Source: Antechinus flavipes (taxonomy: Eukaryota). Taken from it: a stretch of DNA of 64,000 bases. The stretch spans positions 620,620,001-620,684,000 of the forward strand of contig NC_067400.1 in assembly GCF_016432865.1 (NCBI RefSeq). The letters are read 5' to 3'. Position 1 is the stretch's first letter; each line of letters starts with the position of its first letter. The position numbers and the translations under genes are program-made. Positions 7,105 to 58,545 of this stretch are shown piece by piece. Under the pieces are notes generated by a model that saw only the letters and a list, made by a program, of their open reading frames with translations, did no database searches and was not told the origin of the DNA.

Positions 7105-7645
7105 ACATACTTAAAACAAATTTTCTCCTTCAAGGATGGATAGCTTATTTCTTCTAGGTGCATCATAGGTGGTTTTTAGGAGATGTCAGGAATTGGTAGG
7201 TTTAGTCTTTCAAAGACAAATAAGTTTTTGAAAATGGGATTCTGAACCAAACCCCCAAATCTTCAAAGCTCTGCCTTTTTTTGTCTCCAGACTCCACTTG
7301 CTAATCTCTGGGCACCCACTCTCCTAGGGAACCTACTTGTATAGAATAGCTGGCATTTATATTGAGCCAAATTTAAAAAGAGAAATATAATGAGACAAGA
7401 TAAAATGAGGCTTCTTCTCTCCTTTTTACTACCAGCAGGAGGCATAGTAGGGGATTCCTGAGGGATTAAGTGCTCATTAAATTCCAAAGTGCTGAGTGTG
7501 ACTTGGGAATCTGGAGTTAACTTTCACACTCATTTGTAGTCATTAGACAAGAACTTTGTAAAGATAAGAGTTTTTTGGATTCATCCAGAAAACAATGATT
7601 CAGCTTCTGGGAAAATACGTGGTAACAGCTGAGGTGGAAGAGAAG
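7105..7645 (-). promoter_or_regulatory. OR-1 promoter and non-coding first exon module
   Basis: Homologous to blocks upstream of the other four ORs. TCATTA at 7474-7479, TAATGA at 7388-7393, O/E-like ttcctgaggga, donor AA|GTATGT at 7105-7110. Confidence 0.7.
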
Positions 7646-8129
7646 GAGCACATCACACAAGAACATTGATATTTTTACTCTAATCAGTCATAGAATATTG
7701 AATGTCAGATTTGGTAAAGTGTTGAGATCAGAGAATGTCACAGCTTGAAAGACTCTTAGAACTAGGAATGTTAGAGCTGGAATTAATACTAGAATCTTGA
7801 TTTCTTGACACCCATTTATATGTTCTTTTCTTTATATTCGCAATATTCTGGACAAGCTCTTACTATTAAAATTATACTTAAGTGCTAAGATTTCTTAGCA
7901 GGGAGTATTTTCCCCTCATTCCTAGATGCCTGTTAGCAAAGGCTTTGATCATAAAATCATAGCAGTATATATTTTAGAATATTTAGACCTGGAAGGAGCC
8001 TTAGAGATTACTGAATCCAATTCACTCATTTTATTGATGAGAAAACTGAGAGTCAGAGGTGTTAACTGATGAGTTGCCCCATAAGTGACAGTTTTAACAT
8101 TCCCTGTTCCAAGGGTCTTTATTCTCATT

Positions 8130-9215
8130 ATCGTTGACACCCTTATATCCCATTTCATTATTCTTCAACAAATTGCCTTCTTTACCATCCCCAATTCTTT
8201 AATTTATCTTCAATCTTCTCTGGTGGCCTGCAAACAAGCCCATGTCTCCTTCCCCTTGAAAATGTTCTCATTTGATCTATCCATCCATGCTATCATTGAG
8301 GTGTCTCCTACCTTGCAAGGCCCATTTGGATGTCTCTACCTCCTATCTTCTCACTCTTTTCTGAATTCTTTACATTCTAGCTTCTGACTTTATAATTCAA
8401 TCAAATGCTACTTTCCCCAAAGTTATTAATAATCTCTTAACTGCCAAATCTAATGATCTTTTCTCAATTTTCATCATTCTTGACCTGATTACAGCCTTTG
8501 ACATTGTCAACCACTCTCTCCCCTCTAGGGTTTTATGACAACATTTTCTGTATTTCTTCCTATTTTTGACTTATATGACTGTTCTTTCTCAGTCTCCTTT
8601 ACTGGATCTCCATCCATATCATATCCACTTATTATGGATGTCCTTCATGGCTCTGCCTTGGATATTTTTCCTTTCTATCTGTATATTATTTCAACTTATC
8701 TGATTAACTATCAAACATTCAGTTTTCATCTTTATGCTGGTGATTCTCAAATCATATAATACAAATTTTATCTCTCTGCTGACCTTTCATCTTGCATCTT
8801 GAACTAAGTTTTAGAGATGTTGAATTGGATGTTATATAGATATCCTAAATTCAACCCATCCAAAGTATTGTCTTTCCCCCCAAACCTTTTATCTTTCATA
8901 ACTTCCCTATTACTGACAAAGGCACTGATCTTTCCTCTTACTCAGATTTACAATCGAAAAGTAACCTTTAATTCCTCACTCATTATAACTTTTTCCTTTT
9001 TCCAATCTTTTGCAAGAGCTGTCTATCTTACATATATCTTATATTTCCTATTCTCCTTTGACACTCCCACAATCAAAATGTATGGTCCTCATCACTTCAT
9101 ATTTTGTCTCCGTTAGATTGTGAGTTCTTTAAGGGACTGTCTTATCTTTTTTTTTTTGTATTTCTAGTACTTAGAAATACAATACAAATAGTAGGCACTT
9201 AAATGTATATTGATT
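8130..9215 (+). mobile_element. L2 LINE (RT C-terminal region to 3' end), degenerate
   Basis: Decayed RT text including tatgctggtgattctcaaatc (YAGDSQI, from YADDSQI) and the L2 tail tagattgtgagttc...agtaggcacttaaatg. Confidence 0.8.
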
Positions 9216-9584
9216 AGCTATGGAATGTATGTCTCTCCTGATATATTAATCCACTGAAAGGGCTGAGGAAAGGTCAGTGTTATGTTTGTGTTTTTCCTTT
9301 ATCCTTGGTGCTGGTATATCCTGAATAATTTGCCTAGTCTAGATGGCTGAGATATCAACCTGTTGTTTGAGGAGAAGATAACAGATTTTCTGTGATAGCC
9401 TAAACTACTGCTCTGAAATAACAATTCTCTGAAATCCTATCTGATCATATACAACCCTAATTATTAGATAAAATTGTTTTTTTTAAATGGTATTCATATT
9501 TTTTTTCTGTTGTTGAAATTTTGAGAATCACCCCTCTTTTATTTCCCTTTGTACTATCAAAATGAAATACAAACATCTCTTCTT

Positions 9585-11863: not shown

Positions 11864-12796
11864 TTAAGAGTCATTTTTCTCCCCCATTAGTTTCCTCAAG
11901 GCTCCCTTGACATCCTTGTTCCTGAGGCTATAGATGAGGGGGTTGAACATTGGTGGAAGGACACCATACAATATAGAAATGATTTTATCTCGATCCCGGC
12001 TGGTCTTGTCCTGTGGCATCATGTACATGGAGATGGCAGTACCGTAGAAGACAATCACCACAGTGAGGTGGGAACTGCAGGTAGAAAATGCCTTTTTTCG
12101 ACCTTCAGCAGAGCGTATCTTTAACACAGCTCTCAGGATACGGCCATAGGAGACAAGGATGAAGACAAAAGGTGCTAGGAGAGTCAGAGTACTACTGGCC
12201 ATCATAAACAATTCATTCAAATGCAGATCATTGCAAGCAAGCTTAATGACAGCCAAAAGCTCACAGGAGAAATGATTGATGAGGTTGTGGCCACAGAACT
12301 CCAATGGGGTGGTCAGTGTTGGGATTACAGTGAGTAGAAAGGATGACACCCAGGACACAGTTGCAAGCCAGACACAGAGCTGGGGGCTCATTCTCACTGG
12401 GTAGCGTAAAGGGTCACCAATGGCGATGCAACGGTCATAGGCCATGACAGCTAGAAGAAGACATTCTACCACCCCCAAGTAGAGACCAGCACACATCTGG
12501 GCCAAGCACTGGCCCAGGGAGATGGCAGGGATGCTGACTAGGCAATTGATTAGTACTTGAGGGAGACTAGATGAAGTATAACAGATGTCTAGGAAGGATA
12601 GGTTGCTGATAAAGAAATACATTGGAGTGTGTAGGTGGGTATCATAATATATCAAGAGGAGAATGAGGCTGTTCCCCAGCAAAGTCATAAGATAAGATAC
12701 TAGGAGCAGGCAGAAGAAGATGACTTGGGCTTTGGGGTACTCTGAGAGCCCAATCAAGATGAAATAGGTCACAGATGTGTCATTTTTATCATCCAT
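11864..12796 (-). CDS. OR13H1-like: Olfactory receptor OR-2 (OR13H-like), 310 aa, intact
   Basis: All OR motifs present, N-glycosylation site NDT. Splice acceptor ctttccttccccccactttag| 24 nt before the ATG. Confidence 0.95.
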   Translation of the reverse strand: MDDKNDTSVTYFILIGLSEYPKAQVIFFCLLLVSYLMTLLGNSLILLLIYYDTHLHTPMYFFISNLSFLDICYTSSSLPQVLINCLVSIPAISLGQCLAQMCAGLYLGVVECLLLAVMAYDRCIAIGDPLRYPVRMSPQLCVWLATVSWVSSFLLTVIPTLTTPLEFCGHNLINHFSCELLAVIKLACNDLHLNELFMMASSTLTLLAPFVFILVSYGRILRAVLKIRSAEGRKKAFSTCSSHLTVVIVFYGTAISMYMMPQDKTSRDRDKIISILYGVLPPMFNPLIYSLRNKDVKGALRKLMGEKNDS

Positions 12797-12949
12797 AGTC
12801 TTACTCCACTATCTATATCACTAAAGTGGGGGGAAGGAAAGCATTAAATCACAAAATGATACTGACATTTTGAATTTTAGATAACAGAACACTTTGTAAT
12901 ATCTATTTGAACCATTTAATGAGAAATCTCCATAACCACTATTATCACA

Positions 12950-14316: not shown

Positions 14317-15976
14317 ACTTGGGCAAGGCAATTTCTTTCTCTGGCCAAGATTGGACTAGATTAGTCCATTCTATCCATTAGTCCATCTGATATCCTATAT
14401 CTGACCTTGCAAGAGCATCATGAGATACATAAGCCAAATATTGTTATCCTTATTATATACCCGAAGAGTTGGAAATAGACTTCGTATAGATATTATTATA
14501 TGGACCAAGCTAGAGAGCTGCTATTGTCTTGGATGCCAATTTTAAATGTCAGCCTCCTCAAAAAGACTCGGCTTAGCCACTGTTGCCTTTTTAATCTTTT
14601 TATACTCTTCACAAACATGTAGAGTAATATCTTCTACTGTAAGACAACAAATTATACATAGGAAAAAATCCTCACTGATTACCTTTAGCTAGGACTTCTG
14701 CCTCAAGGTCAAGGTTACTTCTAGTGAAGTGGAAATGGAATTAGAAGTAGAGCTAGAGAAGTTATGTTGGAGATTTAGTCCTGCTGTTTATTAGTTGGGT
14801 AATCGTAAATCAAGTCAATTACTCTCTCTAAGCCTATTTCCTTATTTCTAGTGGGTACTACTATGTAGGACCATTTAAAAACTCAAATTAGATACTAGAA
14901 ATTAAAATCTACAGAAATATCTCTTATTATATTTTAATTCTGGGCCAGAAATACTTATAACCATTAACACTCAACGTGAGGAGCCATGGCGAGGGCTATG
15001 AAAATGTCAGGTCAAATTTGTCACAAAGCTTTCACTCCCTTTTTGTAGATTCAGTACTAAGTAATAGATTCAGGAAAACAGGAAGAACTTAATAACTATT
15101 GACTGACTAGTGACATTTGGTTATGTTTAATATTGTTCCATGCATATGTAGGATTTTCAAGGCCTGTTGATAATTCAGACATAGTCATTGAGGTCTCGTT
15201 GCTCAGAGGGAGTGTTGTTTCTGAAAAGAAATTCAAGAGATAGGTAGGGATTTTCATGGAGGAGATAATAAATAGAGATATGTATTAGAAGTCATGAGTT
15301 GTATTTAAGCTTTAACTCTGCAATAAATGCAGTGTTCCCTGCGTTAGTGCATTTCACTTCTGAAGATTTAGTTTCCTCATTTGTAGAATGAGGGAGTTGA
15401 TGAAGTGATTGTTGGGATCCCTCACTCCTCTACCAATGATTTTGCAATATGATCCTGCAAACATGGGTTGTGCCTGAAAACCAGGTACTCTAACTCCAAA
15501 ACCAAGATTAGGACAGGAAGCATGAGTAGTGTGGTGGTGTGAAACCATCACTGTATTTGGCTTTCATTTAGATCCTGGTTCTCCCATTTCTTAGCTATAT
15601 GATGTCAGTGTAATCACTCAGAGTCTCTTGCCTATGTTTTTTTCATCTTTAAAGCAAAGGGATTGCACTGATTGATCATAAGGTCCCATTTAAATTTAAC
15701 ATTCTATGACGTAGAAAGAACATTGGACCCAGAGCCAAGAGACCTCTGAGTTCAAGTCATAACTTTCCTACTTAGGAGCTTTGTGGCGAGTCACCACATT
15801 TCCATCAGGAACATTTGCCTCATCTGTAAAATGGATACAAATACAATTACAAAATTTTCCTCATTGGTTTGTTGTGAGAGAAAAAAAATTTTGCAGCACT
15901 TAAAAAATATACAAAAATGTGAACTTATAATAAAACTATTCTTCCCCTAAAGGAACTCCAAGAATATCTATCTTAC

Positions 15977-18590: not shown

Positions 18591-19095
18591 ACTCACCTCC
18601 AACAGAAATTCCCCTTCAGGCATATCTAGTCCATCTCCCCCAGTGAATCATGGATGCATCATCAGAGCCTGTCATAGGCAAGGAAGTGGATGAAGGTGAA
18701 CCTCAACTTCTAGATAGATTCCCCAAGGCTAAGTTCTTTCTCCCTGTTTTCCTTTAGTTTCTCATCCTGTAACATTTGTAAAGGAATCCTTCTCTAAAGA
18801 GGAGCTAGCACTTCAATTAAGTCAGAGGGAAAGGAGGAAAATAATTGGGGAAGGAGGTAAAATTAGTCTTCAATTCTCTTTTCTTTCTCCAGGGATTCTA
18901 AGAGGAACTCTGAGGGACCAAAGTCTCATTAAAATCAAGAATGTTTTGATTAGCTTGGGAATAAGAAGTAAACTTTCTGACTCACTTAGAGTCTTTGGTG
19001 GAGAAGTTTTGAAAGATGAACTTATTAGACTAACTTATAGAAAAAGTAAGTCAGCTGCTCAGAAAATACCCTCTGACAGCTAAGGTAGGAGAGGA
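18591..19095 (-). promoter_or_regulatory. OR-2 promoter and non-coding first exon module
   Basis: TCATTA at 18926-18931, TAATTG at 18842-18847, O/E-like ctctgaggga, consensus donor GAG|GTGAGT at 18591-18596. Homologous to the other four modules. Confidence 0.75.
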
Positions 19096-19318
19096 GACAA
19101 GAACAGAAAAGAGGAAAGAAGATGAGAAGAAAAGAAAAGAGAGAAGAGGAAGGAAGTGAAAAGGAAAGGTAATGAGAGGAAAGGAAAAGAGAGGAGAGAA
19201 GTCAGAAGAGGAGAGGAAAAGAAAGGAGAAGTTAAAAGAAGAGATGAAAAGAGAGGAAAGAAGAAGAGAGAAGAAGAGAGGAGAGGAAAAGAGAAGAAAA
19301 GAGAGGAAGAGAGGAGAC
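19095..19318. repeat. Purine-rich (GA/GAAAA) low-complexity tract
   Basis: Almost only A and G. Explains the spurious K/E/R-rich and F/L/S-rich ORFs. Confidence 0.9.
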
Positions 19319-26805: not shown

Positions 26806-27737
26806 TTAGGGATTATTCTTTCCCCTCATTAGTTTCCTGAAAGCCCCCTTCACATCCTTGTTCCGAAGACTGTAGATAAGAGGATTGAGCATGGGGATTA
26901 CAATGCAATACAATATGGAGATGATCTTATCTTCATCTCGGCTGGCTTTGTCCTGGGGCATCATGTACATGGAAATGGCAGTGCCATAGAAGATAACTAC
27001 CACAGTGAGATGGGAGCTGCAGGTGGAGAAGGCTTTCTTCCGTCCATCAGCTGAGCGCATCTTCAACACAATTACCAAGATGCGTGCATAAGAGGCTAGG
27101 ATAAATGTAAAGGGCACCAGAAGAGTTAGGGAACTGACGGCCAATATTAGCAGTTCGTAGAACTTCAGATCATTGCATGCAAGCTTGAGGAGAGCTAAGA
27201 GTTCACAGTAGAAGTGGTTGATAATGTAGTGGCTACAGAAATCTAGTGGCATGGTAAGGACCGGGACCACGGAAAGTAGAAAGGATATGAACCAGAGAAC
27301 CATTGCGAGTTGGACACAAAGCTGAGGTCTCATTTTCACTGCATAGTGCAGGGGGTCACTGATGGCTACAAAGCGATCATAAGCCATGATGGCCAGAAGA
27401 AGGCATTCTACACACCCAAGTAGAGAAGGATACACATTTGTGCCTGGCACTCTTTCAGGGAGATGATGGGAACCTTGACTAAGCAGTTGATGAGCATCTG
27501 AGGCACAATAGTTGATATGAAACAGATGTCCAGGAAGGACAGATTGCTTAGGAAGAAGTACATGGGGGTGTGAAGGTGGGGATCATACTGGATCAGGAGA
27601 AGAATGAGGCTATTTCCCAGCAGATTGACAAGATAGGATCCCAGAAGCAGACAGAAGAAGATGACTTGGGCTGTGGGATAGTCTGAGAGCCCAACCAGAA
27701 TGAAATAGGTCACATCTGTGACATTTCTTCTATCCAT
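26806..27737 (-). pseudogene. OR13H1-like: Olfactory receptor OR-3 (OR13H-like) with a single 1-bp frameshift
   Basis: ATG at 27737 (MDRRNVT). The frame breaks at TTG GGT GTG TAG (stop at 27408-27410) where paralogs read TTG GGG GTG GTA GAA. Span is 932 nt versus 933 in OR-1/2. Both halves are otherwise open with all motifs. Acceptor ttttttttcctttttgttccttcag| 17 nt before the ATG. Could be an assembly error. Confidence 0.88.
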
Positions 27738-27884
27738 AGAATTCTTTTTCCTTACTGAAGGAACAAAAAGGAAAAAAAAGTCACAACAGGTTGAAAAGTA
27801 ATTATAATAAGGTTTTTTTGCATGTATGAAAGACCAGTTTGTATGTATGTGTGTGGGGGAATTTATACCTTTTAGCTCAAAATC

Positions 27885-31655: not shown

Positions 31656-32165
31656 ACACACCTAGGACAGAGTCTTCTCCGAAGATGTCCAGCTTCTCTC
31701 TCTCCACTGCATCATGGATGGTTTAGGCTGATGCCAAGAACCAATCAGCTTCTGCCAAAGATTAGTTCATTGAACTGGACCTCTAGAGAGGTCACCAAGA
31801 CAAAAATTTCTTTCGAGTCTTTACTTTTCAGTCACTCACACATTCATAGGAACAACCCTTTGTGATAGATAACTGGTCCTTGGATTAAGCCAAACTGAAA
31901 GAAGAAAAATAATTGGAGGAAGTCAAATTGTCCTTCACCTCTGCTCCTTTCTGTCTCTAGGGCCTACAGGAGTAGGCCTCTGTGGGAACACGTGCTCATT
32001 AAAATCAGAAGTTCTGACGGTGGCTGGGGAATCAGGAATAAACTTTCTGACTCACTTAGAATCAGAAAGTTTTTGAATGTTTGATTATTGGAGAAGATAA
32101 AAAAAAACAAACTAATGATTCAGGGGCTGAGAAAACACCTTGTGATAGCTGAGGTGAAAGAGGGG
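31656..32165 (-). promoter_or_regulatory. OR-3 promoter and non-coding first exon module
   Basis: TCATTA at 31996-32001, TAATTG at 31910-31915, O/E-like ctctgtggga, donor TAG|GTGTGT at 31656-31661. Homologous to the other modules. Confidence 0.7.
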
Positions 32166-32469
32166 CCACATTACAAGTACAATTAGTGTATTTATTGGGA
32201 TCATTAATTGATTTTGTGCATAACAGAGTAAATAGATTGCCAGAGTCTGCAGGTCAAGGGAGTAAGGAACAGAAACTCTTATTCATGGAAAGCCTACAGA
32301 CACACACACATAACATATATACACATTGTACATATACACAAACATACACATATATTTATACAAACACATATATGTATATATGTACACACATATGTATAAT
32401 GAATTTAAATCACGTAATGCTCATATTAAGAGAGATTTAAAGGTGTACTAGGGGAAGTTATATACCCTT

Positions 32470-37899: not shown

Positions 37900-38838
37900 C
37901 TACTTCGGAGACATTCTTTCCTCTCCCGTTAATTTCCTTAATGCCATCTTCACATCTTTGTTCCGAAGGCTGTAGATGAGGGGGTTGAGCATAGGTGGAA
38001 GGATACCATACAGCATAGAAATGAGCTTGTCCTGATCCTGGTTGGTCTTGTCCTGGGGAATCATGTACACAGATATCGCTGTGCCATAGAAGATAACTAC
38101 CACTGTTATGTGGGAGCTGCAGGTAGAGAAAGCCTTCTTTCGACCCTCTGCTGAATGCATTTTCAGCACAGCCCCAAGGATGCGCCCATAGGAGGCAAGG
38201 ATGAAGGCAAAGGGTGTGAGGAGAGTCAGGGAACTGGTGGCCATCATCAACCACTCGTAAAACTTCAGATCATTGCAAGCACGCTTGAGGATGGCCAAGA
38301 GTTCGCAAGAAAAGTGATTGATCATGTGATGGCCACAGAACTCCAGTGGCATTGTAAGGGTTGGAACCACAGTCAGAAGAAAGGCTGCCACCCAGGAAAC
38401 CACTGCTAGCTTGACACAGAGCTGGGGACTCATCCTAACTGAGTAGCGTAGTGGGTCGCCAATGGCGATGCAACGATCATAGGCCATGACGGCCAGTAGG
38501 AGGCATTCCACAACCCCAAAATAAAGGCCGGCACACATCTGGGCCATACACTGGCCCAGGGAGATGGAGGGAATCTTGACCAAGCAGTTGATGAGCACCT
38601 GAGGCACACTAGATGAAGTATAGCACATGTCCAGAAAGGATAGATTACTGAGGAAGAAATACATGGGAGTATGGAGGCGGGAATCATAATGGATCAAGAA
38701 GAGAATGAGACTGTTCCCAAGTAATATGATAAGATAGGACATTAAGAGCAAGCAGAAGAAGATGACTTGGGCTCTGGGATACTCTGAGAGTCCAACTAGA
38801 ATAAAATAGGTCACATCTGTTTCGTTTCCTTCATCCAT
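37900..38838 (-). CDS. OR13H1-like: Olfactory receptor OR-4 (OR13H-like), 312 aa, intact
   Basis: All OR motifs present. Start placed at MDEGNET (ATG 38838) by paralog alignment and an acceptor ctgctctgttttcctgcag| 19 nt upstream. The ORF-track extension to 38880 is intronic. Confidence 0.95.
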   Translation of the reverse strand: MDEGNETDVTYFILVGLSEYPRAQVIFFCLLLMSYLIILLGNSLILFLIHYDSRLHTPMYFFLSNLSFLDMCYTSSSVPQVLINCLVKIPSISLGQCMAQMCAGLYFGVVECLLLAVMAYDRCIAIGDPLRYSVRMSPQLCVKLAVVSWVAAFLLTVVPTLTMPLEFCGHHMINHFSCELLAILKRACNDLKFYEWLMMATSSLTLLTPFAFILASYGRILGAVLKMHSAEGRKKAFSTCSSHITVVVIFYGTAISVYMIPQDKTNQDQDKLISMLYGILPPMLNPLIYSLRNKDVKMALRKLTGEERMSPK

Positions 38839-41310
38839 GGCCTTCTCTATTCTCAATCTGCAGGAAAACAGAGCAGTCACATTTTTTCCAAATTATAACT
38901 TTTGACAGATATTTGAATATCAGACCAATGAGCCATTTTGACCAACAACTAAGTATCTATAATTTTATAAAGTCCTCCATAAAAAGGCTTTATGAGATTA
39001 TGAAATAGCAACAGTAATAATAATAATAAAAACACCTACTTTCAATATTTTTGGAATGTAATTTTCTACTTGAAAACTTTCTTGATTTCCTCAAATACTA
39101 CTTTCTTCCTTAAGTGTTGTTTAGACATATCATATTAATTATTACATTATATCACATGTCATATCATATTCTGTTATATGTTATATTATACATGCATACA
39201 TGTACATATTTGCTCTATGGGTATTTAGGTATGTACAAATCTCATTAATTGATTTCTTTTTTTTTTTTCTCTTAGATATTTCCTCATATATCATATATCT
39301 AACTTATTTAGCTCATACCTTAAATCCTTTCCATTTGGTAGGACTCACTATTACTTAAAGTTTACTAACATAGACTTCAAGAGTCCAATATCAACCTTCA
39401 TGTGTTAAGAAATCCACGTGGAACTTTTATGGATATAAGGGATTAAAACAACGAGAGAACCAATTTATATATTCACATATGAAACAACTACAGAGGAGGT
39501 AGAGAAAATATGAAATACTGGCAAGAGGACTGATCTAGAAGTCGAGTCCTAAATGCCAATAAATTTTATTGCTAACTTGTTTATTTTGTCAGTCTGTTGT
39601 TTAGTCATTATGTCTGACTTTTTGTGACTGTATTTGGGGTTTTCTTGGCAAAAATACTGGAGCAATTTGCCATTTTCTTCTCAACTCATTTAATAGTTGA
39701 GGAAAACTGGTAACTCTCTGAGGCCAAATTTGAACTCAGGAAAATGAGACTTCTTAATTCCAGATCTGCTATTCTTATCCACAATGCCAGTTACCCAACC
39801 AACTTAGTATTTACTTAGGAATAAATTTACTTCCATTGGCTAGCAAAAATGGTCTCAGTTTTCAAGCTTAGTAGTGCAGACATAGAATTGTAATAAGAAG
39901 CAATACTTGGCTTAGTGCCCCAGCTCCATCACTTATTAGACATAGAACCTGAAGTCAAATGCCCTCTCACCCTTTCCTTCTTTATCTGTAAAATGTGAAT
40001 AGTAATATGGTCACTACATAATTTGTAGGTTTTGTTGTATATCTGAAAAAGTGATGAACATAAAATGCTATATGAATATGAACTATTACTTTTTGGGAGG
40101 AAAGGAGGCAATTCCATTCAAAGTATGTCCCAAGTGATTACATCATAAGGTAATTGGAATGCCTAACTGATCCCAAAGTATTGGGAAAAAACCCTTTGTC
40201 ATTGGGATTGAAATGGGCCATGCCATCAGGTTTATATCACCTTTATGTAGATACCTTGTTATGTAGAGACTGTTTATTATTTAAAAGAAAATTTGTCTGG
40301 AAGGGTGTGAGTCTGTTTAGGCTGTCATTCACTTGAGTACAGATGGCATCCAAGACAGGAATCACAAGAATTTGATTCTAACTCCAGTTTGACATCAAAG
40401 GGCTAGGGCAATATTTATATAGCACAGCATAGATAGATAGAGAGAGAGAGATAGAGAGATAAATTGGATGGATAGATTCAGATGAAGAGATGTTTATAGA
40501 TATATATTCATATACAGATCTCTATATATCTATATATATCCATCTTTCTTCATATCTCTATATATTTATAGTTATATAGAGAGATAATATTTATATATAG
40601 TGTCTTCCATGTGCCAAGCACTATGTCTTTAAGCCCTTTTTACTAATATAATCTCATTTGATCCTCAAAACCAATTTGAGAATTTATTATTGTTATATTA
40701 TTATTATCATAATTTCATAGACTGAGACAAATAGAGATTAAATGGCCTTGCCCTGGGTTATATAAATATCTGAGCCTGGATTTGAATTCTGGTCTTCCTA
40801 CCTCTAGGTTTAGAGCTTTACTTATAACTAACTCAAACTCATTGTATCATTCAACAAGTTACTCTTTCTTTCTGATTCAGTTTCTTCATCTGTAAACTGA
40901 AGGGGTTGTTCTATATGATTTTAACATGTCTCCTTGTTCTGATTTTTTATGTTTTGATTTCCAACAATCCAGTTAGTTCATATTTCTCTAGTCTAAATTC
41001 TAAATTCGCTTCTATGTTGAACATTCTGCATTTAGGAACTAAATTTCCTTATAGCTCTAACATTTTCTTTTCCATGATCCATTACTTTCCAGTTTTGTCC
41101 TGTGATTGACATTTTGAGGCTTCTGTATTATCCATGGTATTTGTATTCTAGTTATGTTATTCTAAATTACCCTGTAAGTTGTACTATGTCATACTCTGTA
41201 CAAATTTTTTCTTTATATAATTCCAATATGGGTCAATCACTGTATATGTAAAGGTAAAGAGGAAACAAGAAAGGGACAAGAATAATGAAAAAAAAATGGA
41301 AAATTCTTAC

Positions 41311-44455: not shown

Positions 44456-44935
44456 CCTCACCTTTGTAACTCCACTACCCACTACCCTCAAAAAACTTGT
44501 ACCTAGAATAAGAAATCTGTGGCAATATGGGTAGCTACAAGATGCCAGAAAACAGTGGGTCTCAGTCTCACAAAAGTAAAAAAAATGTTTATAAAACTGG
44601 ATCTTCAGATAGTTCCCCAAGACCAAATTTTAGTCTTTTTCTACCTAACTTTTCCTTTCCAAACAGTACTACTCATCCTATCCACCACACACCACATGCA
44701 CATACAATTTCAGGGAAATCTTTTAGTGATGGAAGACTGGCACCTGGCTGGAACCACTGCAAAAGGAGAAGAATAATTGGGGAAGGAGGCAAAATTGACT
44801 GTCATTTCTCCTCCTTTTTGACTCCAGAGATTTCAGGAAAGGGCTTCCATGGGGCAAAGTGCTCATTAAAATCTAAAGTCTTGAGATTCCCTTGGGAATT
44901 CAGAGCAAACTTTCTAACAGCCATTAGTGGAGTAG
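44456..44935 (-). promoter_or_regulatory. OR-4 promoter and non-coding first exon module
   Basis: TCATTA at 44863-44868, TAATTG at 44774-44779, full EBF palindrome ATTCCCTTGGGAAT at 44886-44899, donor AAG|GTGAGG at 44456-44461. Confidence 0.75.
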
Positions 44936-45202
44936 TTTTGGAAAACGTTATCTGATAAGCTTAACAGAAAAAAAAAAGTAATTCAGCTAAACAGTAAACC
45001 AGAGAAAGCATAGGTTAAAGGTTTGCCCAGAAACACATAGCTAGTAAATGTCTGAAGTTATTTGAAATCAAATCTTTCTGACTTCACATCTGGTACTCTA
45101 CCCACTGCACTGCCTAGATGCTTCTAGTTGATCAATGGTGTTGACCCCTTAAGGCAGCATTTTATTTTTATTATACTTATATTCTTGCATTTGGACCCCA
45201 TC

Positions 45203-51100: not shown

Positions 51101-51495
51101 GGACTAAAAAAATAAATGAGAATCATAAAATTTGGATAACTTGTCCAAATTCATACTAGTAATAAGTGACAGAGGAGCAGGAGATGGATTCAGAGTTCTG
51201 TGCACTGACTCAGACTACCTCAAGGTGAACTTTTAGGCAAGGGAAGATTGTTGTTGAATTAATATTCTGGAGATACTTCCTTAAGCAACTTATGTTGATG
51301 TGAAAAGAGTATTTAGACTTTCTGAGACAATTGAAGTTCCACTTCTAGAAAACAATTATCAAAAATGCTGCCTCATCATTTATTGCCCTAGTGATTAGTT
51401 TTGGAAAAGAAAACTTTTTTTTGGGGGGGAAGGGGGACTATTAAAGCAACCACTTCTTTCATTTTCCAGTTTTGTTAAAAAGTAACCAACCATCT

Positions 51496-52434
51496 CTACT
51501 TTGGAGACATTTTTTCCTCTCCCATTAATTTCCTTAACGCCATCTTCACATCCTTGTTCCGAAGGCTGTAGATGAGGGGGTTGAGCATAGATGGAAGGAT
51601 ACCATACAGCAGAGAAATGAGCTTGTCCTGATCCTGGTTGGTCTTGTCCTGAGGAATCATGTACACAGATATCGCTGTGCCATAGAACATAACTACCACC
51701 GTTATGTGGGAGCTGCAGGTGGAGAAAGCCTTCTTTCGACCCTCTGCTGAATGCATTTTCAGCACAGCCCCAAGGATGCGCCCATAGGAGGCAAGGATGA
51801 AGGCAAAGGGTGCAAGGAGAGTCAGGCAACTGGTGGCCATCGTCAACCACTCATAAAACTTCAGATCATTGCAAGCACGCTTGAGGATGGCCAAGAATTC
51901 GCAAGAAAAGTGATTGATCATGTGATGGCCACAGAACTCCAGTGGCATTGTAAGGGTTGGAACTACAGTCAGAAGAAAGGCTGCCACCCAGGAAACCACT
52001 GCTAGCTTGACACAGAGCTGGGGACTCATCCTAATTGAGTAGCGTAGTGGGTCGCCAATGGCGATGCAACGATCATAGGCCATGACGGCCAGTAGGAGGC
52101 ATTCCACAACCCCAAAATAAAGGCCGGCACACATCTGGGCCAGACATTGGCCCAGGGAGATGGAGGGAATCTTGACCAAGCAGTTGATGAGCATCTGAGG
52201 CACACTAGATGAAGTATAGCACATGTCCAGAAAGGACAGATTACTGAGGAAGAAATACATGGGAGTGTGGAGCCGGGAATCATAGTGGATCAAGAAGAGA
52301 ATGAGGCTGTTTCCAAGTAATATGATAAAATAGGATATTAAGAGCAAGCAGAAGAAGATGACTTGGGCTCTGGGATACTCTGAGAGTCCAACTAGAATAA
52401 AATAGGTCACATCTGTTTCATTTCCTTCATCCAT
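51496..52434 (-). CDS. OR13H1-like: Olfactory receptor OR-5 (OR13H-like), 312 aa, intact
   Basis: 298/312 aa identical to OR-4. ATG at 52434 with acceptor gctcttttttcctgcag| 19 nt upstream. The ORF-track extension to 52548 is intronic. Confidence 0.95.
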   Translation of the reverse strand: MDEGNETDVTYFILVGLSEYPRAQVIFFCLLLISYFIILLGNSLILFLIHYDSRLHTPMYFFLSNLSFLDMCYTSSSVPQMLINCLVKIPSISLGQCLAQMCAGLYFGVVECLLLAVMAYDRCIAIGDPLRYSIRMSPQLCVKLAVVSWVAAFLLTVVPTLTMPLEFCGHHMINHFSCEFLAILKRACNDLKFYEWLTMATSCLTLLAPFAFILASYGRILGAVLKMHSAEGRKKAFSTCSSHITVVVMFYGTAISVYMIPQDKTNQDQDKLISLLYGILPSMLNPLIYSLRNKDVKMALRKLMGEEKMSPK

Positions 52435-54920
52435 GGCCTTCTCTTTTCTCAAACTGCAGGAAAAAAGAGCAATCACATTTTTTTCCAAATTATAACTTTT
52501 GACAGATATTTGAATATCAGACCAATTTGCATGAGCCATTTTGACCAAGAACCAAGAATAACTATGATTTTGTAAAGTCCTTCATAAAAAGGCTTTACGA
52601 GATTATGAAATAGTAACAGTAATAATAATAATAAAAACACCTATTTTCAATATTTTTGGAACATAATTTTCTACTTGAAAACTTTCCTGATTTCCTCAAA
52701 TACTACTTTCTCCCTTAAGTGTTGTTTAGAAATATCATATTAATTATTATATTATATCACATGTCATATGTTCTGTTATATGTTATATTACATATGTATG
52801 CATATACCTATATGATCTATATGTATTTAGGTATGTAAAAATCTCATTGATTGATTTCTTTTTTTTTTTTTTTGCTCTTAGATATTTCCTCATATATCAT
52901 AAATCTAACTTATTATTTACTCATACCTTAAATCCTTTCCATTTGGTAGGACTCACTATTACTTATAGTTCACTAACATAGACTTCAAGAGTCCAATATC
53001 AAACTTCATGGTTTGATAAGAAATCCACATGGAACTTTTATGGAAATAAGAGATTAAAACAATGAGAGAACCAATTTATATATTCATATACTTAACAACT
53101 ATAGAGGAGGTAGAGAAAATACGAAATACTGAGAAGAGTACTGATCTAGAACTCGAATCCCAGATTCCAACAAATTTTGTTGCTAACTTACTTATTTTGT
53201 CAGTCTGTTGTTTAGTCATTATGTCTGACTTTTTGTGACTGTATTTGGGGTTTTCTTGGCAAAAATACTGGAGCAATTTGCCGTTTTCTTCTCAACTCAT
53301 TTAATAATTGAGGAAAGCTGGTAACTCTCTGAGGCCAAATTTGAACTCAGGGAAATGAGACTTCTTAACTCCAAATCTGCTACTCTTATCCACAATGCTA
53401 GCTACCCGACCAACTTAGTATTTACTTAGGAAGAAATTTACTTCTATTGTCTAGAAAAATGGTCTCAGTTTTCAAGCTTAGTTGTGTAGACATAGCATTG
53501 TAAGAAGAAGCAATACTTGGCTTAGTGCTCCAGCTCCATAACTTATTAGACATAGAACCTGAAGTCAAATGCCCTCTCACCCTTTCCTTCTTTATCTGTA
53601 AAATGTGAATAGCAATATGTTCACTATATAACTTGTAGGTTTTGTTGTATATCTGAGTGATGAACATAAAATGCTATATACTTTTTGGGAGGAAAGGAAG
53701 CAATTCCATTCAAAGTATGTCCCATGCGATTACATGGTAAGGTTATTGGAATGCCAAACTGATCACAAAGACTGAAAAAAAAAAGTCCTTTTTTTTGTTA
53801 TTGGGATTGAAATTTGGCTGTAAATGGGCCATGCCATGAGGTTTATATCATCTTTATATAGAGACCTTGTTATTGAGACTGTTTATTATTTATAAGAAGA
53901 TTTGTCTGGAAGAGTGTGAGTCCATTTAGGCCATCATTCACTGGAGTACAGATAGCATCCAAGGCAGGAATCACAAGAATTTGATTCTAACTCCAGTTTG
54001 ACATCAAAGGGGTAGGGGAATATTTATATAGCACAGGACAGATAGATAGATAGATAAATTGAATGGATAGATTCAGATGAATAGATGTTTATAGATATTC
54101 ATATATAGATCTCTCTCTATAGATATCTATATATCCATCTCTATCCATCTCTCTCTATATCCCTATATATCTATAGTTGTATAGATAGAGAGATAATATT
54201 TATATGTAGTATCTCCCATGTGCTGAGTACTATGCCTTTAAGCTCTTTTTACTAATATAATTTCATTTGATCCTTACAACCAACCTGAGAGTTTATTATT
54301 GTTATATTATTATCATAATTTTATTGCCGAGTAGACTAAGACAAATAGAGATTAAATGTCCTTGCCCTGGATTATATAAATATCTGAGCCTGGATTTGAA
54401 TTCTGGTCTTCCTACCTCTGGGTTTGAGCTTTACTTATAACTAACTCAAATTCACTATATCATTCAAGAAATTACTCTCTGTTTCTGACTCAGTTTCTTC
54501 ATCTGTAAACTGATAGGGTTGTTCTATATGATTTTAACATGCCTCATCACTCTGATTTTTTATGTTTTGTTTTCCAACAATCCAGTTAGTTCATATTTCT
54601 CTAGTCTAAATTCTAAATTTGCTTCTATATTGAACATTCTGCATTTAGGAACTAAATTTCCTTATAGCTCTAACATTTTCTTTTCCATGATCCATTACTT
54701 TCCAGTTTTGTCCTGTGATTGACATTTTGAGGCTTCTGTATTATCCATGGTATTTGTATTCTAGATATGTTATTCTAAACTACTCTGTAAGTTGTTCTAT
54801 GTCATACTGTTTACAAATTTTTTCTTTATATAAGTCCAATATGGGTCACTCATTGTATACGTAAACGTAAAGAAGAAACAAGAAAGGGACAATAATAATG
54901 GAAAAAAGGAAAATTCTTAC

Positions 54921-54955
54921 CAGGAAGGAATAGCAGAGTAATTGATAGGGTCAAC
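54921..54955 (-). other. Predicted 35-nt 5'UTR micro-exon of OR-5
   Basis: cctccttttttctag| acceptor and CTG|GTAAGA donor. Paralog of 41311-41345. Confidence 0.4.
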
Positions 54956-57900
54956 CTAGAAAAAAGGAGGCCAATTCAAGGGTCTTCCTCAATAAGCATT
55001 TGAAAAGCTTAAAACGAACTAAGCAATTCTTCTGATCAGTGCCTGGACAATAACTATCTCACTAAATGAAATCGGGTGGTGTTTCTGAAATACGAGCTTC
55101 AAACTAGGTTCTTTTGACTTCAGATCTTTCATGGAGGCAGAGTTGTTTGGAAAGAGTCCAAAATTTGGAGCCATGATATTGGTTTGTCTTCGCTCTGCAA
55201 TTTCTTAGCAGTTTTATAACTAATAAATCATGCCTTTCATCATCTTCAAAAAATGGGATTGTATTTCATCTCATTGTTGGTGAAAAAAAAGATTGGACAC
55301 AGGTATAAGGAGATGTGTGTTCAACTTCCAACTTACAAACTTTATGACAATGCGCAAATTAGTTCAATTTTCTGACACTGTTTCCTCAACCATAAAATAG
55401 GAACATTTGTTGCATTGTTTTCCCATGCCAGATTAAAAACAAAATATTCATTACCTTATTACCCATGTATTACATGGACATCATCTAAGGTCATTATGGA
55501 TTTTGAGAAGATCCAGGCATAGTATTTGTAACTGTACAGTCATACATTGAAAGTCCATGGTTAGAAGAGGGATTCAGAGGTCAAAGATCTCTTATTAGCT
55601 AATAGACTGTCCATAGTTTATATCTTCATCTTTGAAGACCTCCTGATATTCCATTTTTGAATCCTTTAGTCAACCCATAGGAAGTCATTCTTCATTGAGC
55701 AAAGCATTGTCACATTTGGACAGAGATGATGACTTTATAGACTCTTGGGAGGAAAATGACTTTTTTTAAAAAAAATAATTCTACCTTTCCCTTCAGAACA
55801 ATACTGTGTTCTCTTAACTCCAAATGGAGAGATAAGTCATTCTAGGCAAGCCAAGGATTGATATCAACCTTGAAACTCCCTTTGCAGGAGGTCCTGCCTC
55901 TTTGTAATTTGTAGAATCAGAAATTTGGTACCTTTATCTTGAAAAATATTGCAATGTTGGTTTGCCTCAAAATACTATAGTATATGTATGTATGTATACA
56001 TATATGCACACACATATAAATCTCACATCATTGAAAGGAATGTTAGAAATCAATTGTAGAACTCCAGCTTCCTACCCATTGTAGGTTGTATGTTCATGGT
56101 ATTCCTCACATATTATCATCCAGGATACTGCATCTTATTTTTCTCTATGTGTCTGCAAAGATGGTGGTCCCTTAGTTCTATAATGAAATCTTTCCTCCTT
56201 TACATCTCCAAAAATCCTCAGCTGCCTTCTAGGCACAGGTCATCTGCTGCCTCTTGCACAAAATTTTCTTTCTTCTCCCCAGTTGCTAGATTTCTCTCCC
56301 TAAATCACTTTCTTGATTTGAATTTGCTTATTTGTATAAAGGCCATATTCTCCCCAAAGAAATAAAAGTCCCTTGAGGTCGGGGACATGGATTGCTCATG
56401 TCTAATAAAATTCCTTGCACATAGTAGGCACTTAATTTGTGTTCATTGAAGTGAAATGATACGAATCCACGATCTTCCTAAATACTTTTTCTGATGAGGG
56501 GCTCACTATTTGAAAGGTAGCTAAATTCTCCATCTTAACATTTTATTTTTTATAATGAGTCAAAATCTGTTTCCCTATTACTTATAGAATCAAAGGATCA
56601 TAGTATTTCAAAGTTGTAAGGGACCTTAGAGGTTTTCTAATGTAGGCCCTTCGATTTATAGGTGGGTGAACTGAGCTCCAAAGAGGTCAAGTGATTGTTC
56701 TGAAATGACAAAGACAGTAAATATTATGACCAGAACTCAAAGGAAGTTTTGAAAGTTCAAGTTCAGTGCTCTTTTCACTATACCATGTTCCTATTTTCCT
56801 CTTGGATTTACACAAATCCTATTTAGATTTCCACATGAGAAACTTTTGGATTTCTGAAAGCAGTGATCATCTCCTTAGCAGTGTTCTCTTTTTCAAGCCC
56901 AATATCTGCAATTATTTCAATCAATGCCAAATCACTCTGGTTTATTCTCCTGGGAATACTAGCCACAGCTACCAGGATGTGCTACAGCTTTTCTCTCTCT
57001 CTTTCTCTGGGTATATTACAACATGTGACACAATAAATTAAAACATGCACAAATGGTAAATAGCACTTTAATTGAAATGTTGGATCTGATATCAGAAATA
57101 CCTGAGTTCATATATAGCTTCAGATACTCACTAGTTGTTTGGTCCTGGGAAAATGACAATCTCTCTAAGACTCAGTTTTTTTCATATATAAAATAGGGAT
57201 AATAATAACACTTACATCCTAGGGTTGTTGTTTTTATATAAAATGAAGTAATATTTTTAAAGCATTTTCTAAACCTTAAAGCACTATATTCGAATATAAT
57301 TATTATTACTTGTTACGTGCCAGCTTATTTCATTCAGTTAAAAACTTATTTCCCTAGGAGGAAAAATACATTCAAGTTAACCAAAGAATTCATTTAAATC
57401 AGGCAGTCTGAAGCAGGTCCTACCTCCTCAGTGGTACATCTAGAAATAACAGGTTCCTGCCAGAAAGTGAATGCAGCTATTCATGGAACTGTAGCTAAAT
57501 ATAAGAACACCAAGAGATAGCATAGTATAAAAGCAAATTCACTGAATCATTGCTAAGGAATCCTGTTTTTAATGACAGTTCTACTCACTATTGGGAGTAG
57601 CCATGAATCCCAGATTGGCTATTAAGACATAAGGGATATCACTACATTTCTCTTCACTTCCATATTCTAATGTATAAAAGTATGAGGTTGGTCTGAAAGG
57701 GCCATTGAGGCTCTAAATTCTATGTTCTATATTCATTCTTGCTCTGACACTCTATATTCTAGGTTAATGAAATTCTCTTAAGTTCTAACATTATATTCTC
57801 TAAAGTATCTCAATATTGTGTTCTAATAAACACATTGCATATTGATATTTTCTTCTAGTTCTGATATTTCATTCTTTTATGAAAATTGATCTAATAAGAA

Positions 57901-58064
57901 AGTTTAACTTTCTCTTTAATCCATACCTTTTTTTCATATATTTATTCACAATTCTCTGTGATCCACCTCTCAACATTCTCTTTCATTTCCTTTTTGAAAG
58001 TATCACTGACTGAGCAAATAAAAGGGAATAGGAGAGCAGAAGATATCTCTGGTTTAACATGATC

Positions 58065-58545
58065 CCTTACCTTTGTAACTCCAATACCCACTACCCTCAA
58101 AAAACTTGTACCTAGGATAAGAAATCCGTGGCAATATGGGTAGCTACAAGATGCCAGAAAACAATGGGTCTCAGTCTCACAAAAGTAAAAAAAAAGTTTA
58201 TAAAACTGGATCTTCAGACAGTTCCCCAAGACCAAATTTTGTCTTTTTCTACCTAACCTTTCCTTTCTAAACAGCACTACTCATCCTATCCACCACACAC
58301 CACATGCACATACAATTTCAGGGAAATCTTTTAGCGATGGAAGACTGGCATCTGGCTGAAACCACTGCAAAAGGAGAAGAATAATTGGGGAAGGAGGCGA
58401 AATTGACCATCATTTCTCCTCCTTGTTGACTCCGGAGGCTTCAGGAAAGGGCCTCCATGGGGCAAAGTGCTCATTAAAATCTAAAGTCTTGAGATGCCTT
58501 GGGAATTCAGAGCAAACTTTCTAACAGTCATTAGTGGAGTAGTTT
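58065..58545 (-). promoter_or_regulatory. OR-5 promoter and non-coding first exon module
   Basis: TCATTA at 58471-58476, TAATTG at 58382-58387, donor AAG|GTAAGG at 58065-58070. The EBF palindrome is degraded to ATGCCTTGGGAAT. Confidence 0.75.

What the first reader, a model, noticed from the sequence alone, without database searches (positions are those of the whole stretch)
7105..58545. Five-fold conserved promoter and first-exon module: an OR regulatory grammar readable from paralogs alone
Seen: 4.1-6.1 kb upstream of each ATG lies a homologous block (7105-7645, 18591-19095, 31656-32165, 44456-44935, 58065-58545), while the surrounding introns of OR-1/2/3/4 do not visibly align. Shared order on the plus strand: splice donor; TAATTG (TAATGA in OR-1); O/E-like site; CTCATTAAA; GGGAA-N8-AACTTTC. 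Donors differ but all stay GT: GTATGT, GTGAGT, GTGTGT, GTGAGG, GTAAGG. The minus-strand TTTAATGAG resembles the AACTTTTTAATGA homeodomain core of the mouse H and P elements. Established: OR promoters use Lhx2/Emx2 homeodomain and Olf1/EBF sites. Inference: these are the true promoters. The conserved AACTTTC motif is not explained by either factor; it recalls the AAACTTTTC motif I remember from the class I J element, and may bind a third factor.
Basis: partly seen in the sequence, partly recalled or inferred. Interest (0 to 1): 0.7.

Follow-up and report, generated by a model that had tools for sequence, protein, structure and literature searches.

The report
Conserved smell-receptor promoter module
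Each of five tandem smell-receptor genes of a dasyurid marsupial has, 4-6 kb upstream, the same roughly 500-base non-coding block; its core is also found in koala, Tasmanian devil, rhino, dugong, hyena and alpaca, so it is most likely the genes' promoter plus untranslated first exon, an ordinary kind of element that is unusually old and easy to read.

Summary
Observation confirmed. The window holds five minus-strand OR13H1-like receptor genes. OR-3 is frameshifted, and OR-4/OR-5 are one recent 11-kb duplicate. One homologous block lies upstream of each gene, always on the gene strand, and there are no other copies.

The paralogs are old (dS about 1.0-1.3). Their introns no longer align, yet the 190-bp core keeps 60-73% identity and fixed motif spacing. 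A profile built only from the five window blocks finds the core upstream of orthologous or paralogous genes in six other species, always on the gene strand. It finds nothing in an alligator locus or an otter OR13H1 locus.

The invariant clusters are GAAAGTT, TAAnnAG and the CC of an O/E-like site. Several features fit a promoter plus first exon:
- homeodomain and O/E sites that are not juxtaposed
- a GC peak just downstream of the core
- strong GT donors 380-455 nt further on
- an acceptor 17-24 nt before every ATG

The promoter reading is therefore likely (0.7), not shown.

New detail: eutherian copies carry an exact AAACTTTTC facing GAAAGTTT around a TAATGA. What binds these motifs is unknown.

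The scan had separately noted the inverted repeats around block B3.

The parts
7105..7655 (-). Block B1, upstream of OR-1 (ATG at 3342). Motifs: AAAGTTCTTGTCTAATGACT 7557-7538; GAAAGTT 7525-7519; ATTCCCAAG 7510-7502; TTTAATGAG 7481-7473; O/E-like TCCCTCAGGA 7465-7456; candidate donor GTATGT 7110-7105 (weak).
18591..19110 (-). Block B2, upstream of OR-2 (ATG at 12796). Motifs: AAACTTCTCCACCAAAGACT 19009-18990; GAAAGTT 18977-18971; ATTCCCAAG 18962-18954; TTTAATGAG 18933-18925; O/E-like TCCCTCAGAG 18917-18908 and TCCCTGGAG 18895-18887; CCAATTAT 18848-18841; donor GAG|GTGAGT 18596-18591.
31656..32180 (-). Block B3, upstream of the frameshifted OR-3 (ATG at 27737). Motifs: GAAAGTT 32047-32041; ATTCCCCAG 32032-32024; TTTAATGAG 32003-31995; O/E-like TCCCACAGAG 31987-31978; CCAATTAT 31916-31909; donor TAG|GTGTGT 31661-31656. 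The upstream TAATGA site is deleted.
44456..45010 (-). Block B4, upstream of OR-4 (ATG at 38838). Motifs: AAACTACTCCACTAATGGCT 44938-44919; GAAAGTT 44914-44908; perfect palindromic EBF site ATTCCCAAGGGAAT 44899-44886; TTTAATGAG 44870-44862; CCCCATGGAA 44854-44845; CCAATTAT 44780-44773; donor AAG|GTGAGG 44461-44456.
58065..58620 (-). Block B5, upstream of OR-5 (ATG at 52434). It is a recent duplicate of B4 (94% identical in the core). Motifs: GAAAGTT 58521-58515; TTTAATGAG 58478-58470; CCAATTAT 58388-58381; donor AAG|GTAAGG 58070-58065.
3343..3385 (-). OR-1 candidate 3' splice acceptor: pyrimidine tract plus AG at 3364-3363, 20 nt before the ATG.
12797..12845 (-). OR-2 candidate 3' splice acceptor: CCTTCCCCCCACTTTAG, with AG at 12822-12821, 24 nt before the ATG.
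27738..27780 (-). OR-3 candidate 3' splice acceptor: AG at 27756-27755, 17 nt before the ATG.
38839..38880 (-). OR-4 candidate 3' splice acceptor: TTTTCCTGCAG, with AG at 38859-38858, 19 nt before the ATG.
52435..52476 (-). OR-5 candidate 3' splice acceptor: AG at 52455-52454, 19 nt before the ATG.
11864..12796 (-). OR-2 coding exon (310 aa, intact). It is OR13H1-like: 98% identical to a Sminthopsis protein and 92% to koala.
37900..38838 (-). OR-4 coding exon (312 aa counted from MDEGNETD).
51496..52434 (-). OR-5 coding exon (312 aa). dS to OR-4 is 0.08.
26806..27737 (-). OR-3 coding region, split into two overlapping frames (26806-27450 and 27408-27989). It is a frameshifted pseudogene or an assembly indel.
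2410..3342 (-). OR-1 coding exon (310 aa, intact).

Best explanation
Each block is the proximal promoter and untranslated first exon of the receptor gene downstream of it.

The proposed mechanism (inferred): in a maturing olfactory neuron, homeodomain factors of the Lhx2/Emx2 type bind the TAATGA and CAATTA sites, and Olf/EBF factors bind the TCCC..GG sites of the ~190-bp core. Transcription starts in the GC-richer stretch about 60-150 bp after GAAAGTT. The ~250-350-nt leader is then spliced from a GT donor 380-455 nt after GAAAGTT to the acceptor 17-24 nt before the ATG, which removes a 3.7-5.8-kb intron.

The module was already present upstream of the ancestral OR13H1-like gene before marsupials and eutherians split. 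It was copied with every tandem duplication and kept by selection while the rest of the intron decayed.

Shown here: homology, copy number, strand, selective constraint, motif content, and presence of splice signals. Inferred: the start site, the splicing, and the identity of the binding factors. GAAAGTT and its upstream partner AAACTT(T)TC probably bind a further, unidentified factor.
For: One block per gene. There are exactly five copies, all on the gene strand, 3.8-5.8 kb from the ATG.

Constraint among paralogs. Synonymous divergence is 1.0-1.3 and the introns do not align. The core nevertheless keeps 60-73% identity (JC distance 0.34-0.57) with motif spacing fixed to the base pair.

Constraint across species. 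A profile built from the five window blocks alone finds the element on the gene strand upstream of the ATG in these loci:
- koala, two copies, E about 1e-92
- Tasmanian devil, 8e-78
- dugong, 5e-12
- rhino, 2e-9 and 1.5e-5
- alpaca, 1e-4
- hyena, 5e-4
Marsupial-eutherian dS is 1.4-3.1.

Specificity. Of 151 tiles of 300 bp across the OR-2 and OR-4 units, only the block tile 19050-18751 hits all eutherian copies colinearly. The other hits are multi-copy, on both strands, or compositionally biased.

Motif conservation and content. The invariant columns over 13 sequences fall in GAAAGTT, TAAnnAG and the CC of TCCC. TAATKR sites number 2-4 per marsupial core against 1.06 in background. Near-consensus EBF sites occur in 8 of 13 cores against 0.063 expected.

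Promoter-type layout. The homeodomain and O/E sites are 7 nt apart. That is the promoter-type arrangement, not the juxtaposed enhancer-type arrangement (PMC5608512).

GC peak. GC content peaks 50-100 bp after GAAAGTT in both clades. Mouse OR promoters are described as AT-rich with a GC peak at the start site and an O/E motif within a few hundred bp upstream (PMC12547500).

Splice signals. The best donor within 700 nt lies at +381 to +453 in B2, B3, B4, B5 and koala_a; devil has one at +444, and rhino, hyena and alpaca have CAG|GTGTGT at +391 to +407. Background density of donors that strong is 0.5 per kb per strand. Every ATG is preceded by a pyrimidine tract plus AG, also in the seven other species' genes.
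Against: - No RNA evidence.
- The OR-1 lineage has a weak donor, and its koala ortholog has AT at the aligned position.
- Conservation continues 15-20 nt past the aligned donor (TTCATGGAGG, also present in eutherians). The exon end is therefore not pinned down.
- Against close relatives the block is only slightly better conserved than the intron. In the koala comparison 100-bp bins of the block are 81-88% identical, against about 77% for the intron.
- In four of five eutherian copies the central TAAT is TAAC, which is not a canonical homeodomain core.
- No TATA box is shared between the blocks.
Confidence: 0.7

Rival explanations
1. The block is a conserved gene-proximal regulatory element, such as a per-gene enhancer or an internal or alternative 5' exon with its control region. 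It is not the main start site; transcription begins elsewhere.
For: Homeodomain and O/E sites also mark OR enhancers (PMC12547500). B1-B3 have a pyrimidine tract followed by CAG about 80 bp before the core (CTCTTTCACCTCAG), which could serve as an acceptor for a still more distal exon. No start site was mapped. The distance to the ATG varies from 2.3 to 9.1 kb among species.
Against: There is one copy per gene in a fixed orientation, not one per cluster. The homeodomain and O/E sites are not juxtaposed as in Greek-Island composite motifs. The candidate upstream acceptor is absent in B4/B5, and that stretch is not conserved in eutherians. A strong donor follows at a conserved distance. There is a GC peak right after the motif cluster.
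Confidence: 0.2
2. The similarity is a passive leftover of the tandem duplications, possibly refreshed by gene conversion between paralogs, or it is an old interspersed repeat. It has no function.
For: The whole unit was duplicated, as the 11-kb OR-4/OR-5 copy shows. Old repeats are common in these introns.
Against: With dS of about 1 or more, nothing else in the introns aligns. Recent conversion would leave tracts of very high identity, not 60-73% identity with invariant short motifs. The element sits at the same relative place and strand in eutherians. There is no extra copy in 60.6 kb of the window or in 168 kb of other loci. The block tile does not hit the multi-copy old repeats that other tiles hit.
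Confidence: 0.04
3. The block encodes a conserved structured non-coding RNA or a small peptide rather than acting as DNA.
For: A mechanical 142-aa ORF (44527-44955, + strand) overlaps B4.
Against: Rfam finds nothing in 3400-64000. The ORF is absent from the other blocks. Conservation falls on short motifs known as DNA-binding sites, with indels between them.
Confidence: 0.02

Closest known systems
Mouse class II odorant receptor proximal promoters (M71/Olfr151, MOR23, P3 and the mapped OR promoter sets)
   Same: Both lie a few kb upstream of a single coding exon and are followed by a non-coding leader exon. Both are AT-rich with a local GC rise and carry homeodomain (TAATKR) plus O/E sites within about 200-300 bp. 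In both, the two site types are not juxtaposed (PMC12547500, PMC3247239, PMC5608512).
   Different: Here no start site is mapped. The element is shared by a whole subfamily and is recognisable between marsupials and eutherians. Its best-conserved motif (GAAAGTT) is neither a homeodomain nor an O/E site; a large mouse promoter survey found no common motif beyond those two (PMC3247239).
[quoted passage not shown]
   Same: Marsupial blocks contain TTTTAATGAG, a 10-nt match to x21. The upstream site reads AAACTTTTC-CTC-TAATGACTCT in eutherians and AAACTTCTCCACTAATGACT in marsupials. These are the two halves of the extended site in the same order.
   Different: There is no exact 13-mer anywhere. 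The halves are separated by 4-6 nt. Most eutherian copies have TAAC at the second site.
AAACTTTTC motif of the class I J element
   Same: The exact 9-mer occurs in rhino (two copies), dugong and hyena blocks, and nowhere else in those loci. Its near-complement GAAAGTT(T) is conserved in 12 of 13 blocks. Like the J motif, it sits beside homeodomain and O/E sites.
   Different: These are class II (family 13) genes, and the copies are per-gene elements, not a cluster-wide enhancer. Marsupial copies have AAACTTCTC or AAACTACTC instead of the exact motif. In the J element the motif was not needed for enhancer activity in transgenes, and no binding factor is known (PMC7804114).
Greek Island OR enhancers (Lhx2/Ebf composite motif)
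   Same: Same two factor-site types.
   Different: Greek Islands are intergenic, roughly one per cluster, and have directly abutting Lhx2 and Ebf sites; a 2-bp insert impairs them (PMC5608512). The blocks occur once per gene, with a 7-nt gap between the sites.

Membership tests
OR proximal promoter with non-coding first exon | Lies upstream of an OR coding exon on the same strand, within about 1-10 kb, one per gene | tested here: met
   Five of five genes in the window (3.8-5.8 kb). Also met in koala (two copies), devil, rhino, dugong, hyena and alpaca at 2.3-9.1 kb, always on the gene strand.
OR proximal promoter with non-coding first exon | Homeodomain (TAATKR) and O/E-like sites clustered within a few hundred bp | tested here: met
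   TAATKR: 2-4 sites per 260-bp marsupial core against 1.06 in background. EBF TCCCNNGGGA with at most 1 mismatch: 8 of 13 cores against 0.063 expected. B4 has a perfect ATTCCCAAGGGAAT.
OR proximal promoter with non-coding first exon | AT-rich surroundings with a GC peak at the start site | tested here: met
   GC is 0.54 against about 0.37 in marsupials, and 0.61 against about 0.48 in eutherians, at +50 to +100 after GAAAGTT. This is consistent with a start site there but does not map one.
OR proximal promoter with non-coding first exon | Transcription start site mapped in olfactory epithelium RNA | not testable with these tools
   No RNA run holds the stretch.
OR proximal promoter with non-coding first exon | Leader exon spliced to an acceptor just upstream of the ATG | tested here: inconclusive
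   The signals are present. Donors score 8-12 at +381 to +453 in four of five window blocks, and similar donors occur in devil, koala_a and three eutherians. A pyrimidine tract plus AG lies 17-24 nt before every window ATG. The OR-1 lineage donor is weak or lost. No junction was observed.
OR proximal promoter with non-coding first exon | Sufficient for sparse, neuron-specific expression of a reporter | not testable with these tools
   Needs transgenic animals.
Greek Island / H-, P-, J-type OR enhancer | Intergenic and serving many genes; about one per cluster | tested here: not met
   One copy per gene in a fixed orientation; five in 64 kb.
Greek Island / H-, P-, J-type OR enhancer | Composite motif: Lhx2 and Ebf sites directly juxtaposed | tested here: not met
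   TAATGAG and TCCC are separated by 7 nt in all marsupial blocks. A 2-bp insert already impairs the composite motif (PMC5608512). The published weight matrix itself was not available to score.
Greek Island / H-, P-, J-type OR enhancer | Extended homeodomain site AACTTTTTAATGA | tested here: not met
   No exact match in the window (3401-64000) or in eight loci. Only split or partial versions occur.
Interspersed repeat | Many dispersed copies in both orientations, unrelated to gene position | tested here: not met
   Only the five expected copies in 60.6 kb, and only gene-linked copies in 168 kb of other loci. The block tile does not hit the old multi-copy repeats. A repeat library (Dfam) was not available.
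J-element AAACTTTTC motif carriers | Exact AAACTTTTC conserved across mammals | tested here: inconclusive
   Exact in 4 of 5 eutherian blocks. Absent from all 8 marsupial blocks, which have AAACTTCTC-like variants plus the inverted GAAAGTT(T).

The most novel reading that the evidence does not exclude
GAAAGTT(T) and the facing AAACTT(T)TC, about 32 bp apart around a TAATGA, are binding sites for a third, still unidentified olfactory factor. The same factor would recognise the AAACTTTTC of the class I J element and the AACTTTT half of the extended homeodomain site of the H and P elements. The motif would then be a general, ancient part of receptor-gene control in both classes, not a class I speciality.
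Probability: 0.2. Interest if true: 0.6.

Novelty: new member of a known kind. Interest (0 to 1): 0.4.

Why it matters
Receptor promoters are hard to annotate because each gene is expressed in very few cells, and marsupial receptor genes have no mapped start sites. This case shows that old tandem paralogs alone can reveal the control module. It also gives exact coordinates for five candidate promoters, donors and acceptors that a single RNA experiment could confirm.

The element is recognisable across the marsupial-eutherian split, whereas most non-coding DNA at that distance is unalignable. That makes it a compact natural mutagenesis series: sites deleted in B3, a repeat inserted in koala, TAAT changed to TAAC in eutherians, and O/E sites that move. 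The series shows which positions matter. The most constrained one, GAAAGTT, matches neither of the two established factor-site types (homeodomain, O/E) and resembles a motif whose function in the J element is still open.

Tried and rejected
RNA evidence. The run search found no run on record as RNA; there were four doubtful small-share runs and six DNA holders. I have no transcript data.

Gracilinanus, Monodelphis, Petaurus and Trichosurus loci could not be fetched because the files were too large.

Deeper relatives. A Chinese alligator OR13H1-like locus gave no hit. An otter true-OR13H1 locus (58% protein identity) gave only E 0.013 with the wider profile. The element is therefore either confined to this therian subfamily or too diverged to detect. 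A lone AAACTTTTC 820 bp before the otter ATG has no neighbouring homeodomain or O/E arrangement and is taken as chance.

Close-species footprinting. The dasyurid-koala and rhino-alpaca/hyena/dugong comparisons are too close: introns still align at 65-80%.

Possible second element. A stretch 0.5-1 kb before the OR-2 ATG gave tile hits to rhino and hyena at E about 1.5e-3. With the full query it gave no eutherian hit at E 0.1 or better; the hits that did appear were to repeat-like places. I dropped it.

Other negatives. Rfam found nothing. The Michaloski 2011 and Degl'Innocenti 2016 papers added nothing on this motif or on marsupials.

Not done.

Full report
LAYOUT. The window carries five olfactory receptor genes in tandem on the minus strand:

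| Gene | Coding region | State |
|---|---|---|
| OR-1 | 2410-3342 | intact |
| OR-2 | 11864-12796 | intact |
| OR-3 | ATG at 27737 | split into two overlapping frames; pseudogene or assembly indel |
| OR-4 | 37900-38838 | intact |
| OR-5 | 51496-52434 | intact |

The OR-2 protein is named 'olfactory receptor 13H1-like' by NCBI. It is 98% identical to a Sminthopsis crassicaudata protein, 92% to koala and 72-74% to rhino, dugong, hyena and alpaca proteins. The source is therefore a dasyurid marsupial. By the usual nomenclature, family 13 receptors are class II.

OBSERVATION. MAFFT aligns the five stated blocks in gene orientation (A1).
- Self-BLAST shows that OR-4 and OR-5 sit in one recent segmental duplication (37102-48199 vs 50716-61836, 91.5% over 11.3 kb), so B4 and B5 count once.
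- Among the OR-1, OR-2, OR-3 and OR-4 units the coding exons are 75-80% identical. The only other colinear similarity is the block. The remaining hits match both strands at scattered places and are interspersed repeats.
- A core profile finds exactly five copies in 3401-64000, all on the minus strand.
Spacing is rigid: 44 bp from GAAAGTT to TTTAATGAG, 43 in B5.

IS IT MORE THAN LEFTOVER HOMOLOGY? Nei-Gojobori synonymous divergence:

| Pair | dS |
|---|---|
| OR-2 / OR-4 | 1.0 |
| OR-2 / devil paralog | 1.3 |
| OR-4 / OR-5 | 0.08 |
| OR-2 / koala ortholog | 0.31 |
| marsupial / eutherian | 1.4-3.1 |

At dS of about 1, unconstrained DNA should not align, and the introns do not. The 190-column core nevertheless keeps 60-73% identity between paralogs (JC distance 0.34-0.57). 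That is roughly a third to a half of the synonymous rate.

RELATED LOCI. I fetched 21-kb loci around relatives: koala L001, rhino L002, devil L003, dugong L004, hyena L005, Chinese alligator L006, otter true OR13H1 L007 and alpaca L008. A profile made only from the five window blocks finds the element on the gene strand upstream of the ATG:

| Locus | Position | Distance upstream | E-value |
|---|---|---|---|
| koala | 3583-4004 | 6.0 kb | about 1e-92 |
| koala, next gene | 15468-15987 | about 4.6 kb | about 1e-92 |
| devil | 4341-4846 | 5.2 kb | 8e-78 |
| dugong | 679-943 | 9.1 kb | 5e-12 |
| rhino | 5932-6177 | 3.8 kb | 2e-9 |
| rhino, second copy | 18497-18749 | downstream of the fetched gene | 1.5e-5 |
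| alpaca | 6382-6524 | 3.5 kb | 1e-4 |
| hyena | 7513-7759 | 2.3 kb | 5e-4 |

The alligator and otter loci give no convincing hit. Tiling the OR-2 and OR-4 units in 300-bp pieces against the eutherian flanks shows that only the block tile hits all eutherian copies colinearly. The other hits are multi-copy, on both strands, or compositionally biased.

At shallow depth the contrast is small. Against koala the block is 81-88% identical per 100-bp bin and the intron about 77%. Eutherian introns also still align with one another.

ANATOMY (A5, 13 sequences; upstream part A7; downstream parts A4 and A6). In gene orientation:
1. A loosely conserved, marsupial-only 110-130 bp stretch.
2. AAACTT(C/T)T-CCnC-TAATGACTCT.
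3. GAAAGTT(T).
4. Nine bases later, ATTCCCAAG, an O/E half-site. It is a perfect palindromic EBF site, ATTCCCAAGGGAAT, in B4.
5. ACTTTnGATTTTAATGAG.
6. Seven bases later, an O/E-like site: TCCCnCAGAG in marsupials, TCCCCAGGTG in most eutherians.
7. CCAATTA, which is also a CCAAT box.
8. A GT donor 380-455 nt after GAAAGTT.

Columns invariant in all 13 sequences cluster in AAAGT, TAA..AG and CC.

Natural variation is informative:
- B3 lacks the first TAATGA.
- B4 and B5 have an 8-bp deletion next to it.
- Koala_a has a SINE-like insertion that splits site 2.
- Rhino, hyena and alpaca have TAAC instead of TAAT at site 5.
- Near-consensus EBF sites occur in 8 of 13 cores, but at shifting positions.

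PROMOTER-LIKE FEATURES.
- TAATKR sites are 2-4 per marsupial core against 1.06 in background.
- The homeodomain and O/E sites are not juxtaposed. According to Monahan et al. (PMC5608512) that separates promoters from Greek-Island enhancers.
- GC content peaks 50-100 bp after GAAAGTT in both clades. Mouse OR promoters are described as AT-rich with a GC peak at the start site and an O/E motif within a few hundred bp upstream, and about 300 bp suffices in transgenes (PMC12547500; PMC3247239).

SPLICE SIGNALS. I scored donors with a rough weight matrix typed from the general consensus, so the scores are approximate.
- Koala_a has the same site as B2. Devil has GAG|GTAAGA at +444. Rhino, hyena and alpaca share CAG|GTGTGT at +391 to +407.
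- Donors scoring 8 or more occur at 0.5 per kb per strand in the window.
- B1's donor is weak, and its koala ortholog has AT at the aligned position.
- Every ATG, here and in the seven other species' genes, is preceded by a pyrimidine tract plus AG. In the window these lie 17-24 nt upstream.
- I built no joined exon model.

- The run search found no run on record as RNA.
Protein and locus searches used OR-2. Rfam and the profile scans used 3400/3401-64000.
- One local sandbox script still had the whole window as the BLAST subject for the devil locus. Later scripts worked beside those places.
- None of the fetched contigs was human.

COMPARISON WITH KNOWN ELEMENTS.
AAACTTTTC is the 'class I-specific' J-element motif. 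It is perfectly conserved from platypus to human, yet dispensable for enhancer activity in transgenes. AACTTTTTAATGA is the extended homeodomain site of H, P and the P3 promoter (PMC5638857, PMC7804114). The x21 gene-choice enhancer is ACATAACTTTTTAATGAGTCT.
- The marsupial TTTTAATGAG matches 10 nt of x21.
That is the two halves of the extended site with a 4-nt spacer. It lies about 32 bp before the inverted GAAAGTTT.
- Among the OR13H1-like loci, all exact AAACTTTTC matches lie inside blocks.
- These are resemblances. No binding was tested.

VERDICT. The most likely reading is the subfamily's promoter plus untranslated first exon, older than the marsupial-eutherian split (0.7). A non-start regulatory element is the main rival (0.2). 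As a kind of element it is known. The depth of conservation and the invariant non-homeodomain, non-O/E motif give it moderate interest.

Noticed in passing
window 27885-28773 and 32669-33558: An 890-bp inverted duplication at 98% identity brackets a 3.9-kb segment that contains block B3. B3 currently has the same orientation as the other blocks. The scan already noted this as s1-189952.
   Followed up: partly
window 26806-27989: The OR-3 reading frame is broken near 27430, giving two overlapping ORFs on the minus strand. It is a pseudogene or an assembly indel. Its upstream block B3 still has nearly all motifs.
   Followed up: partly
window 37102-48199 vs 50716-61836: A recent 11.3-kb segmental duplication (91.5% identity; dS of the coding exons 0.08) created OR-4 and OR-5. 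Two further pieces align beside it: 36181-37099 with 49637-50583, and 48853-49660 with 61817-62624.
   Followed up: yes
L001 3441-3582 (koala): A SINE/MIR-like insertion (…TTGAACTCAGGTCCTCCTGACTCCAAGG…) sits inside the koala ortholog of B2, between the AAACTT part and CTAATAACT. It pushes the upstream 90 bp of the block to 3356-3440.
   Followed up: partly
window 44886-44899: B4 has a perfect palindromic EBF/Olf-1 consensus, ATTCCCAAGGGAAT. B5, its recent copy, has already lost one position (…AAGGCA).
   Followed up: yes
L001 about 15985-15995 (koala_b): At the column where seven marsupial blocks have the GT of the candidate donor, the koala ortholog of B1 has AT (TAAATATGT against TAAGTATGT). 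No strong donor lies nearby.
   Followed up: partly
window 44527-44955 (+ strand): A mechanical 142-aa ORF runs antisense through B4. It has no counterpart in the other blocks and is most likely spurious.
   Followed up: partly
L004 about 900-1040 (dugong): A (GA/CAGA)n microsatellite of about 130 bp is inserted in the dugong block between the core and the donor region.
   Followed up: no
window 4171-4335, 16832-17005, 19877-20003, 37322-37464, 50935-51077: Copies of one old interspersed repeat lie in both orientations in several introns. Tiles at 17101-17550, 45601-46050 and 47851-48150 also hit many places in the eutherian loci, which suggests a pan-mammalian repeat, probably MIR-like.
   Followed up: partly
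A4 columns 413-432 and A6 columns 515-545: The stretch just after the aligned donor (GTGTGTTCATGGAGG in marsupials; GTGTGGTCTCTTCATGGAAGG in eutherians) is conserved across both clades. Its role is unknown; it could be a splicing signal or part of the exon.
   Followed up: no
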